Part shown: piece by piece, positions 39,131 through 40,599 of the stretch
Position numbering within the stretch: position 1 is the stretch's first letter
Layout of the letters: each line of letters starts with the position of its first letter
Assembly (NCBI RefSeq): GCF_032062105.1
Contig: NW_026930103.1
Location: forward strand, 620,001 to 684,000
Origin: Saccostrea cucullata
Taxonomy: Eukaryota
DNA: 64,000 bases
Direction: 5' to 3'
Made by a program: the position numbers and the translations under genes
The notes under the pieces: model-generated
The model's input: the letters and a program-made list of their open reading frames with translations, nothing else
Told to the model about the DNA's origin: nothing
Databases searched by the model: none

Positions 39131-40599
39131 TTAACGTTTTTTCGGCGGCAGTGAACAGCTCGGAGTTCCCCAAGTGGGGGCACATGCAGAACTTGCGCTG
39201 GCACTGTGAACATGTTGAGATCCTACAAAAAAATTGAACTGTCAAAATATGTTTTAGATATTTACAAAAAAATAACGTAAATATATTATAACAAAGGACT
39301 TTGATTTTCGATTATTATAAAATGATCAATTTTTAGACCTTATATTCATGTAAAATGGAATTTAATGACTGTTTTTTTTAATTCTATTTAAAAAGAAATA
39401 AAACATAAATTATGTTCTTACCAGTGTTAATGTTGGGAAACTTCACAGGAAAAATTGTATTTTCTTCAAGTAGACGTTTCGCCGGGTTTCCCTGTGTTGG
39501 GGTGCAAGGTGGGCGCTTTGAATTGTCGAACTTGTTGATTATCCCTTCAAACAGCTCGGATACCCTGTCCAGGTCGTCCGGTACTTATCCTTTAAAATGT
39601 TTTTCAAGTTTGGCGAGATCGATATTTACAGTTGCCGATTTCGGGACATAGCCTTCTGTCGTTTTTATGAGATACTTCTTTTTATTGCTGTTGATCAAAT
39701 GGGTCCTTACTTTTTGCGCAAATGACATAGCTGAACTATTTTTCGCTTTCAGTCTTGTTTCATACTCTGTTCGTTTATTCAGTAACTCACGTTCGACTTT
39801 TTTAAGGCAATCACTTGCGGAATCCACGAGCATTTTTTCATCAGGATGTTTACTTAGGTCCCCGCACTGTTCCGGGGTCACGCACTTGTCTATCCTGCAT
39901 TGCCGAATATTATGGTCCAGCCTAAGATGGCAATTTGAGCATTGCTTTCCCCTGCCCTGAACAACGGAGCAATATTTGTCAGTAAGATCGGTGAGCCGGT
40001 CCCTCGCTGATTGGGTTTGAGTCTCCAGGTTCTGAAATTTCCTCTTCAATGACCTCAATTGAATGATCAAGGGGAGATTTGTATTCATAATAATCCAAAA
40101 AATTTGGCTCATGGTCGGTTTGAAAATCAAGCTCTCTCCTAGCTACAGGCTCGCAATTCTGTTCCAATCGCGTACATGAAGATCCGGTGCCGGCATCTAA
40201 CTTGACAGATTTTATCCCAGCTGGGGAAGACCCTTCGACAACTTTAAGGTTAACAACTGGGAAATCGCACCGTGCCTGAAACGTTCTCACCTGTCTTATA
40301 AATCTGTTGAAATTTGTGTCCAATAGATCAATAAAGTCATTTTCATCATCTTTATACATTATGCGCACGGCCGGCATCCGTCCCAAATATTTAATTTGAG
40401 TTTGGATAAGTCCTTCAAGACCTATAAATCCAAGAGATAAGAGTTCTCGGAGTGAAACACTCATCAGGGTACATCTTTCACTTCCATAATAATCATAATG
40501 TACCTTAAAATCAATTTCACAATAATCATCCGAAATTATCTTTGACACAGCCATGTCGCGCCCAATACTGTAATGTGATGCAATCTCCCGTGCAAACAT
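39131..40599 (-). pseudogene. Transposon ORF2, inner copy: PB1-like domain, coiled coil, Cys/His Zn-finger, coiled coil; 2 exons
   Basis: Exon 1 40599-39422 (one +1 frameshift near 40028, TAA at 39585-39587), phase-1 intron GTAAG...TTTTGTAG, exon 2 39222-39131 ending PPKKR*. Motifs FKVHY, YKDDENDFIDL, CSNCHLRLDHNIRQCRIDKCVTPEQCGDLSKH. Confidence 0.75.

What the first reader, a model, noticed from the sequence alone, without database searches (positions are those of the whole stretch)
39131..40599. DD37E transposon carries a divergent second gene encoding a PB1-like domain plus an unusual Zn finger
Seen: inside the TIRs, head-to-head with the transposase, a spliced ORF of about 420 aa. Its N-terminus has both PB1 hallmarks, the beta-1 Lys (FKVHY) and an OPCA-like acidic motif (YKDDENDFIDL); then a coiled coil, C-x2-C-x5-H-x4-C-x4-C-x5-C-x5-H, another coiled coil and C-terminal PPKKR (NLS-like). 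Known: Tc1/mariner elements are normally single-gene, though two-ORF L31-type elements are reported in bivalves; type I/II PB1 domains polymerise head-to-tail. Inference: a self-polymerising nuclear accessory factor (target selection, anti-silencing or scaffold) forming a two-component transposition system whose function I do not know to be described.
Basis: partly seen in the sequence, partly recalled or inferred. Interest (0 to 1): 0.85.

Follow-up and report, generated by a model that had tools for sequence, protein, structure and literature searches.

The report
Transposon-borne polymerising repressor-like accessory protein
An oyster 'cut-and-paste' jumping gene carries a second gene that has travelled with it over long evolutionary time; its protein is built like a gene-silencing factor (a self-chaining head that evolution repeatedly swapped for an unrelated self-chaining head, and a tail ending in co-repressor docking motifs), which suggests these transposons encode their own off-switch.

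Summary
Confirmed. ORF2 lies inside the TIRs of a 5.25-kb DD37E IS630/Tc1/mariner element, head-to-head with an open transposase. The window's copy is broken (one frameshift, one stop); an open copy exists elsewhere in the genome. Residues 12-108 fold as PB1 (Z 12.1, rmsd 1.6 A) with both binding faces. ORF2 belongs to a large unnamed family (614 clusters), sits next to DD37E-type transposases (29 of 42 loci in this genome, 7 outside contigs) and is under purifying selection like the transposase. Best reading: a polymerising co-repressor recruiter, probably damping its own element. No DNA binding, expression or function was shown. The two-ORF layout is, from memory, published (L31 ORF2, function unknown); I could not obtain those papers. 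The scan had not reported this on other DNA.

The parts
38845..38846 (.). TA target-site duplication, left (inner element); lies inside ORF2 of the outer sister copy
   Evidence: empty site in the inner copy at 40295-40310
38847..38946 (+). Left terminal inverted repeat of the inner element (about 100 nt)
   Evidence: 95% to right arm
39131..39222 (-). ORF2 last exon, ending L-P-P-K-K-R-stop (motif 39151-39134): NCoR/SMRT PLKKR-type motif, possibly doubling as NLS
   Evidence: same small last exon in families B, C and L060; RefSeq models P0014/P0159 use the same junction
39223..39421 (-). ORF2 intron (GT...AG, 199 nt)
   Evidence: not tested on reads
39435..39725 (-). Conserved C-terminal core domain, residues 277-373, alpha/beta-hairpin/alpha, net basic, no known fold; in-frame stop at 39587-39585 in this copy
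39726..39845 (-). Second helix of the antiparallel coiled-coil hairpin (residues 237-276)
39846..39941 (-). Eight-ligand Cys/His module (C205 C208 H209 H214 C219 C224 C230 H236), probably two Zn ions; first half is zinc-knuckle-like; sits at the tip of the hairpin
   Evidence: 29 of 110 homologues have exact CX2CX4HX4C spacing; lowest dN, 0.04
39972..40086 (-). First helix of the coiled-coil hairpin (residues 157-194); frameshift (one extra base) at 40029 in this copy
40231..40521 (-). PB1 domain, type I/II (residues 12-108): K17 at 40506, R27 at 40476, OPCA core D69-x-E71-x-D73 at 40350-40336
40552..40599 (-). ORF2 start region: upstream ATG 40599, conserved MAVSK ATG 40554
40600..41771 (.). 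Intergenic region between the divergent genes; presumed shared promoter and candidate ORF2 target (inference)
   Evidence: head-to-head spacing 0.4-1.5 kb in most PB1-type copies
41772..42839 (+). DD37E transposase, 355 aa, open; PAX-like N-terminus, DDE_3, IS630-like
43992..44092 (-). Right terminal inverted repeat of the inner element; TA duplication at 44093-44094
37410..38844 (-). Outer sister copy, left part: TIR and 3' three quarters of ORF2 (frameshift near 38545; last exon ends 37681)
44095..48055 (+). Outer sister copy, right part: 5' end of ORF2 (ATG 44348, minus), open transposase 45717-46784, right TIR

Best explanation
ORF2 is a long-retained accessory gene of DD37E (L31-type) IS630/Tc1/mariner elements that encodes a modular, polymerising co-repressor recruiter. 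Shown: an N-terminal slot holding PB1 or SAM, a conserved core (coiled-coil hairpin tipped by a two-Zn module, then a basic domain of unknown fold), often a UIM/MIU motif, and a disordered tail ending in a co-repressor-type motif. Inferred: the N-terminal domain chains head-to-tail; the core binds nucleic acid or chromatin at the element; the chain displays many weak motifs and so recruits an HDAC co-repressor with high avidity (NCoR/SMRT-HDAC3 for the window's family; Sin3, Groucho or CtBP in other lineages). Most likely target (least supported step): the element's own promoter, giving concentration-dependent feedback that limits transposase as copies accumulate.
For: PB1 fold: VIA Z 12.1, rmsd 1.6 A over 81 residues to Par6 PB1; all top Foldseek hits PB1; 21 of 84 members hit Pfam PB1; 54 of 56 keep both a basic and an acidic face. 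SAM replaces PB1 in 17 representatives (Pfam SAM_2 in 14 of 16), never both; at least 3 switches forced by well-supported branches, a single SAM clade rejected, p-AU 1.7e-8; SAM forms also lie beside IS630-like transposases. SAM and DIX/PB1 are the recognised spontaneous head-to-tail polymerising folds (PMC7614096). Tails (103): literal AAxxL in the last 25 aa of 18 versus 0.66 in shuffles; PxKKR in the last 25 aa of 10 versus 0.02; literal P[LI]KKR 3 versus 0; eh1, FKPY/FRPF and PxDLS-like motifs in other clades; the motif classes need 10 changes on the core tree. These motifs recruit Sin3A, Smrter/NCoR, Groucho and CtBP (PMC9890238). Oyster family C ends in literal LPLKKR on the same small exon. 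Synonymous sites saturated while dN is 0.22-0.52, matching the transposase.
Against: No experiment; no DNA-binding fold or operator site identified. The window's own motif is LPPKKR, not literal PLKKR, and resembles an NLS; PMC9890238 notes that many motif matches are non-functional. 45 of 103 tails show no motif and 12 end in poly-Pro (some are truncated gene calls). Related tails share motifs by descent, so shuffle p-values overstate independence, and the wider patterns were written after seeing the sequences. Gene arrangement varies (head-to-head, tandem, tail-to-tail), so a shared promoter is not universal. Co-repressor motifs fit a decoy or tether equally well. Mantel test of co-divergence on 9 pairs was not significant (r 0.35, p 0.096). 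Expression untested.
Confidence: 0.47

Rival explanations
1. Counter-defence: the polymer represses host silencing genes, or acts as a multivalent sink that draws co-repressors away from the element (anti-silencing, functionally like VANC of plant VANDAL elements or viral co-repressor decoys).
For: Same anatomy as the best explanation; a sink needs polymerisation and a motif but no sequence-specific DNA binding, and none was found. Rapid switching among co-repressor motifs could reflect conflict with the host.
Against: A sink would not obviously need the strongly conserved Zn module and basic core; switching between four different co-repressors is easier to explain if any repressive output will do.
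Confidence: 0.2
2. Target-selection tether: the tail motifs and UIM/MIU bind co-repressor-occupied or ubiquitinated chromatin and the core binds the transposase, steering insertions, as short integrase motifs do in some LTR retrotransposons.
For: UIM-like motif in 31 and MIU-like in 8 of 103 tails (shuffles 1.8 and 0.13). The inner element has landed inside a sister copy, a chance event of about 1e-4 to 1e-3. ORF2 and transposase diverge at similar rates.
Against: One nested insertion only; insertion sites are ordinary AT-rich TA sites; the window's family has no UIM; no transposase contact was modelled.
Confidence: 0.17
3. Structural scaffold for transposition or repair of the donor break, PPKKR being only an NLS.
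For: Polymerising domain, coiled-coil arm with Zn tip, knuckle-like half that may bind single-stranded nucleic acid; family B's PPKKRR fits the classical NLS consensus; ubiquitin binding fits damage sites.
Against: The same terminal slot holds non-basic Sin3, Groucho and CtBP motifs in other clades; the window's KKR-stop lacks the fourth residue of K-K/R-x-K/R; Tc1/mariner transposases generally work alone (established knowledge).
Confidence: 0.13
4. Passenger: a captured host gene fragment drifting inside the element.
For: Both window copies are broken; PB1, SAM and UIM are host-type domains.
Against: Purifying selection between families, linkage over proteins only 25-30% identical, no host gene with this core found.
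Confidence: 0.03

Closest known systems
DD37E(L31) family of IS630/Tc1/mariner elements (Puzakov et al. 2018, as described in PMC7325037 and 10.1101/656579)
   Same: DD37E triad, TA duplication, TIRs, bivalve hosts (Pinctada, Crassostrea virginica listed for L31 in the PMC7325037 supplement; ORF2 homologues found in both). From memory only: later papers report an ORF2 of unknown function in most full-length L31 elements.
   Different: Neither held paper mentions a second ORF for L31; domain anatomy, PB1/SAM swaps, co-repressor and ubiquitin-binding motifs were not found in any paper I could search. No L31 reference sequence was available, so membership by phylogeny is untested.
TBE and Tec elements of ciliates (multi-ORF Tc1/mariner relatives; PMC7325037)
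   Same: IS630/Tc1/mariner transposase plus extra ORFs under selection, one with zinc fingers; Tec is sister to DD37E(L31) in that tree.
   Different: DD34E, three ORFs, ciliate-restricted; extra ORFs are a zinc-finger protein, a small unknown ORF or a tyrosine recombinase; no homology tested.
Arc of bacterial IS605 elements (bioRxiv 10.64898/2026.09.24.754181)
   Same: Transposon-encoded accessory protein that represses the element's own promoter: the closest functional analogue of the best explanation.
   Different: Bacterial ribbon-helix-helix protein acting by direct promoter binding; no polymerisation domain or co-repressor; unrelated.
Host polymerising repressors: TEL/Yan and Polyhomeotic (SAM), plant Aux/IAA-ARF (PB1 plus Groucho-type motif), VEL proteins (PMC7614096)
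   Same: Head-to-tail polymer that gives avidity for co-repressors on chromatin.
   Different: Host genes with known DNA- or chromatin-binding domains; ORF2's core is unrelated and transposon-borne. TEL/Yan and Aux/IAA details are from my own knowledge.
p62/SQSTM1 and NBR1
   Same: Type I/II PB1 (best profile and fold hits), coiled coils, a Zn module, and in many relatives a ubiquitin-binding motif.
   Different: The Zn module is not ZZ; no UBA, FW or LIR match; cytoplasmic autophagy receptors, not in transposons.

Membership tests
IS630/Tc1/mariner (ITm) | DDE/D transposase of the IS630-Tc1-mariner type | tested here: met
   Pfam DDE_3 3e-18, PAX 3e-5; NCBIfam IS630 2.6e-28
IS630/Tc1/mariner (ITm) | Terminal inverted repeats and TA target-site duplication | tested here: met
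DD37E(L31) | DD37E spacing | tested here: met
   D266-x37-E304; also 37 in families B, C and outside loci incl. SAM-type L066. Not diagnostic alone: four DD37E groups exist
DD37E(L31) | Transposase falls in the L31 clade | not testable with these tools
   No reference L31 sequence in the held papers or supplements
DD37E(L31) | Second ORF inside the TIRs (recalled from later papers) | tested here: inconclusive
   Second ORF is present; that this defines L31 rests on memory, papers not held
PB1 domain, type I/II | Ubiquitin-like beta-grasp fold | tested here: met
PB1 domain, type I/II | Lys in beta-1 (plus Arg in beta-2) | tested here: met
   K17 74%, position 27 98% K/R; definition PMC7051960
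PB1 domain, type I/II | OPCA core D-x-D/E-x-D/E | tested here: met
   D69-x-E71-x-D73 in the window protein; strict core in 17 of 56 rows, three or more acids in 54
PB1 domain, type I/II | Head-to-tail self-association | not testable with these tools
   No multimer prediction or biochemistry available
SAM domain (homologues only) | Profile match; acidic mid-loop and basic end-helix faces | tested here: met
   charges by alignment segment, no structure model made
p62/NBR1 autophagy receptors | ZZ zinc finger and UBA domain | tested here: not met
   No ZZ or UBA hit in 84 members; ligand spacing differs
Gag-type zinc knuckle (CCHC) | C-x2-C-x4-H-x4-C | tested here: inconclusive
   Window protein has x5; 29 of 110 homologues have x4; weak Foldseek match to NCp7, E 3.4; no Pfam zf-CCHC hit among top families
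PLKKR repressive motif (NCoR/SMRT) | PLKKR/PIKKR sequence | tested here: inconclusive
   Window LPPKKR deviates at one position; family C and 3 representatives are literal
PLKKR repressive motif (NCoR/SMRT) | Binds TBL1/TBLR1-HDAC3 and represses | not testable with these tools
   needs IP-MS and reporter assay

The most novel reading that the evidence does not exclude
A widespread class of animal DNA transposons encodes its own condensate-forming transcriptional repressor, assembled from interchangeable parts: PB1 or SAM for polymerisation, UIM or MIU for ubiquitin, and a terminal motif for any of four host co-repressors, around a new nucleic-acid-binding fold. It would be a dedicated, evolutionarily modular copy-number control (or counter-silencing) system not described for Tc1/mariner elements.
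Probability: 0.45. Interest if true: 0.88.

Novelty: new variant of a known kind. Interest (0 to 1): 0.72.

Why it matters
Tc1/mariner elements are the textbook one-gene transposons, and how such elements restrain themselves in animals is usually put down to overproduction inhibition or host piRNAs. A second gene kept under selection across hundreds of protein clusters, with repeated swaps between the two known head-to-tail polymerising folds and between motifs for four co-repressors, turns an ORF of unknown function into a directly testable hypothesis. It is also a natural experiment on the interchangeability of PB1 and SAM, offers a compact new fold to solve, and matters for annotation: these proteins are entered as uncharacterised host genes in oyster and clam genomes.

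Tried and rejected
Pfam on the window's ORF2 pieces alone: no significant hit; PB1 appears only with homologues. Fold searches of residues 196-373 against PDB (Foldseek, VIA wide), viral models and the Atlas: nothing above noise; the long helix dominated the VIA list, so the C-terminal domain is weakly tested and 'new fold' is not shown. RING, B-box, ZZ and MYT1 spacings were considered and do not fit; the CDCA7 hit (E 0.65) was treated as chance. Repeated 8-mers shared between families as operator candidates: none. Mantel test of co-divergence: not significant. Papers on L31 ORF2: not held; no held paper joins 'PB1 domain' with transposase terms or transposon-encoded co-repressor recruiters. 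The spliced protein was not joined or searched; exon 1 was searched by reference to the open copy L041.

Full report
The observation. The window holds a 5.25-kb element at 38847-44092 with about 100-nt TIRs and a TA duplication, inserted into ORF2 of a sister copy (37410-48055, 95-97% identical). The transposase (41772-42839) is open, 355 aa, with D178, D266 and E304, i.e. DD37E, and matches DDE_3, PAX and IS630 profiles. ORF2 runs on the minus strand from 40599 or 40554 to 39131 with one intron (39421-39223). In this copy it carries an extra base at 40029 and a stop at 39587; the sister copy is split by the insertion and frameshifted. An open copy is at G000:C12537 (L041), and exon 1 of that copy was used, by reference, for all searches. 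The spliced form was not joined. The junction agrees with a RefSeq model that matches the outer copy exon by exon; names and contig length indicate that the genome is the oyster Saccostrea cucullata (inference).

Linkage and selection. The genome holds several families: A (the window's), B (about eight copies, ORF2 48% identical), C (41%) and more distant ones, each with its own TIRs where checked. Of 42 ORF2 loci, 29 lie within 11 kb of a related transposase (22 of 27 near-complete loci), and 29 of 34 transposase loci have ORF2. A profile search finds 614 clusters at 50% identity; named members come from oysters, Mercenaria and Pinctada, and the rest from marine assemblies. Of twelve contig look-ups, eight showed a transposase beside the gene: head-to-head (P0002, P0006 broken, P0015), tail-to-tail (P0008, P0030, P0092) or tandem (P0122, P0044); the other four contigs were short or lacked one. 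Between families synonymous sites are saturated while dN is 0.22-0.52 for ORF2 and 0.20-0.50 for the transposase; the Zn module is the slowest part. The three supported ORF2 groupings all recur in the transposase tree, though a Mantel test on nine pairs is not significant. ORF2 is therefore a functional part of these elements, not a passenger.

Anatomy. The AlphaFold model (pLDDT 88) gives a beta-grasp domain at 12-108 that matches PB1 domains of Par6, NBR1, Cdc24, p40phox and p62, with sequence support from Pfam and PDB profiles. K17, R27 and the D-x-E-x-D core make it type I/II by the definition in PMC7051960. Residues 157-276 form an antiparallel coiled-coil hairpin with the Cys/His module at its tip. 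Residues 277-373 form a conserved, net-basic domain with no recognisable fold.

The N-terminal slot is a polymerisation slot. Seventeen representatives carry SAM in place of PB1, none both. SAM-type genes also sit behind IS630-like transposases, one confirmed DD37E, and six occur in this genome next to transposase matches. On a tree of the shared core the label changes four times, at least three times on well-supported branches, and one SAM clade is rejected (p-AU 1.7e-8). PB1 and SAM are unrelated folds whose common property is head-to-tail polymerisation (PMC7614096). Repeated exchange between them is the best evidence here that chaining is the function, although it was not modelled or measured.

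The C-terminal slot is a co-repressor slot. The tails after the core are unalignable and rich in S, P and T, but end in short motifs. With the literal motifs of Klaus et al. (PMC9890238), AAxxL occurs in the last 25 residues of 18 of 103 tails (0.66 expected), PxKKR in 10 (0.02), P[LI]KKR in 3 (0), with single eh1 and three PxDLS cases; wider patterns, written after inspection, add Mad-type Sin3 motifs, terminal FKPY/FRPF and PLNL-type motifs. The classes occupy different clades and need ten changes. That paper ties AAxxL to Sin3A, PLKKR to the Smrter/NCoR complex (as in Snail and MeCP2), PxDLS to CtBP and eh1 to Groucho. In oyster families A, B, C and L060 the motif sits on its own small last exon, and family C has literal LPLKKR. 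The window's LPPKKR is thus better read as an NCoR/SMRT-type motif than as only an NLS, though it may be both. In addition 31 tails have a UIM-like and 8 an MIU-like motif shortly after the core (Pfam UIM only weakly); the window's family has neither.

Mechanism. Shown: linkage, selection, domain folds, swaps and motif enrichment. Inferred: the protein polymerises, binds the element or chromatin through its core, and presents many co-repressor motifs at once. I put the molecular reading (polymerising co-repressor binder) at about 0.75-0.8 and, within it, self-repression of the element as the most likely use (0.47 overall), by analogy with Arc of IS605 elements; counter-defence (0.2), target tethering (0.17), plain scaffold (0.13) and passenger (0.03) remain. 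The nested insertion (chance about 1e-4 to 1e-3; the two transposases differ by 8 synonymous and 4 replacement changes, so not a simple hop from the outer copy) is a single event that fits tethering but proves nothing.

Comparison and novelty. The element is an ITm transposon by every test made; L31 membership is likely but could not be tested against a reference. From memory, papers on L31 elements of bivalves and corals report an ORF2 of unknown function; they are not in the library, so I cannot say whether they name PB1 or SAM. Multi-ORF relatives (TBE, Tec) are known. I found no paper on PB1/SAM swaps or co-repressor motifs in a transposon protein. I therefore rate it a new variant of a known kind: known architecture, with a new and testable account of what the second gene is.

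Noticed in passing
window 37410-48055: Element inserted into ORF2 of a sister copy; both transposases open, both ORF2 copies broken; the two derive from separately evolving source lineages (8 synonymous, 4 replacement differences in the transposase).
   Followed up: partly
L049 (G000:C17367), 1789-6427: Family-B ends and an open ORF2, but the left half is only about 75% like family B and has no transposase match: chimeric or ORF2-only derivative.
   Followed up: partly
G000:C2516, C4214, C13059, C15599, C1527, C8173: SAM-type ORF2 families coexist with PB1-type ones in the same oyster genome; five are in tandem behind the transposase, one head-to-head.
   Followed up: partly
window 39223-39421 and equivalents in L043, L052, L060: An intron just before the terminal motif is kept across families only 41-53% identical in protein; retention would delete the motif and could act as a switch.
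   Followed up: partly
window 41735-41748: Pyrimidine tract plus AG about 24 nt upstream of the transposase ATG suggests an untranslated or short upstream exon.
   Followed up: no
G000:C18904, C14753, C10232: Three near-identical ORF2 fragments split by about 500 nt, with a stop and no transposase nearby; possibly a piece carried by another repeat.
   Followed up: no
P0005, P0007 (Magallana gigas models): Database gene models fuse ORF2 pieces to MULE or SRCR exons and carry those names: likely mis-annotation.
   Followed up: no
P0016, P0018, P0019, P0022, P0048, P0052, P0061, P0116 and others: A clade whose tails end in poly-Pro / PPLP rather than a co-repressor motif; partner unknown.
   Followed up: partly
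window 32495-35732: Another set of inverted repeats (32-40 nt arms at 32495, 34147 and 35692-35732, plus a 158-nt hairpin at 34248-34405), apparently nested non-autonomous TA elements.
   Followed up: no
L052 2594-3179: A 0.6-kb MITE with family-C-like TIRs (about 82%) lies directly beside the family-C element.
   Followed up: no
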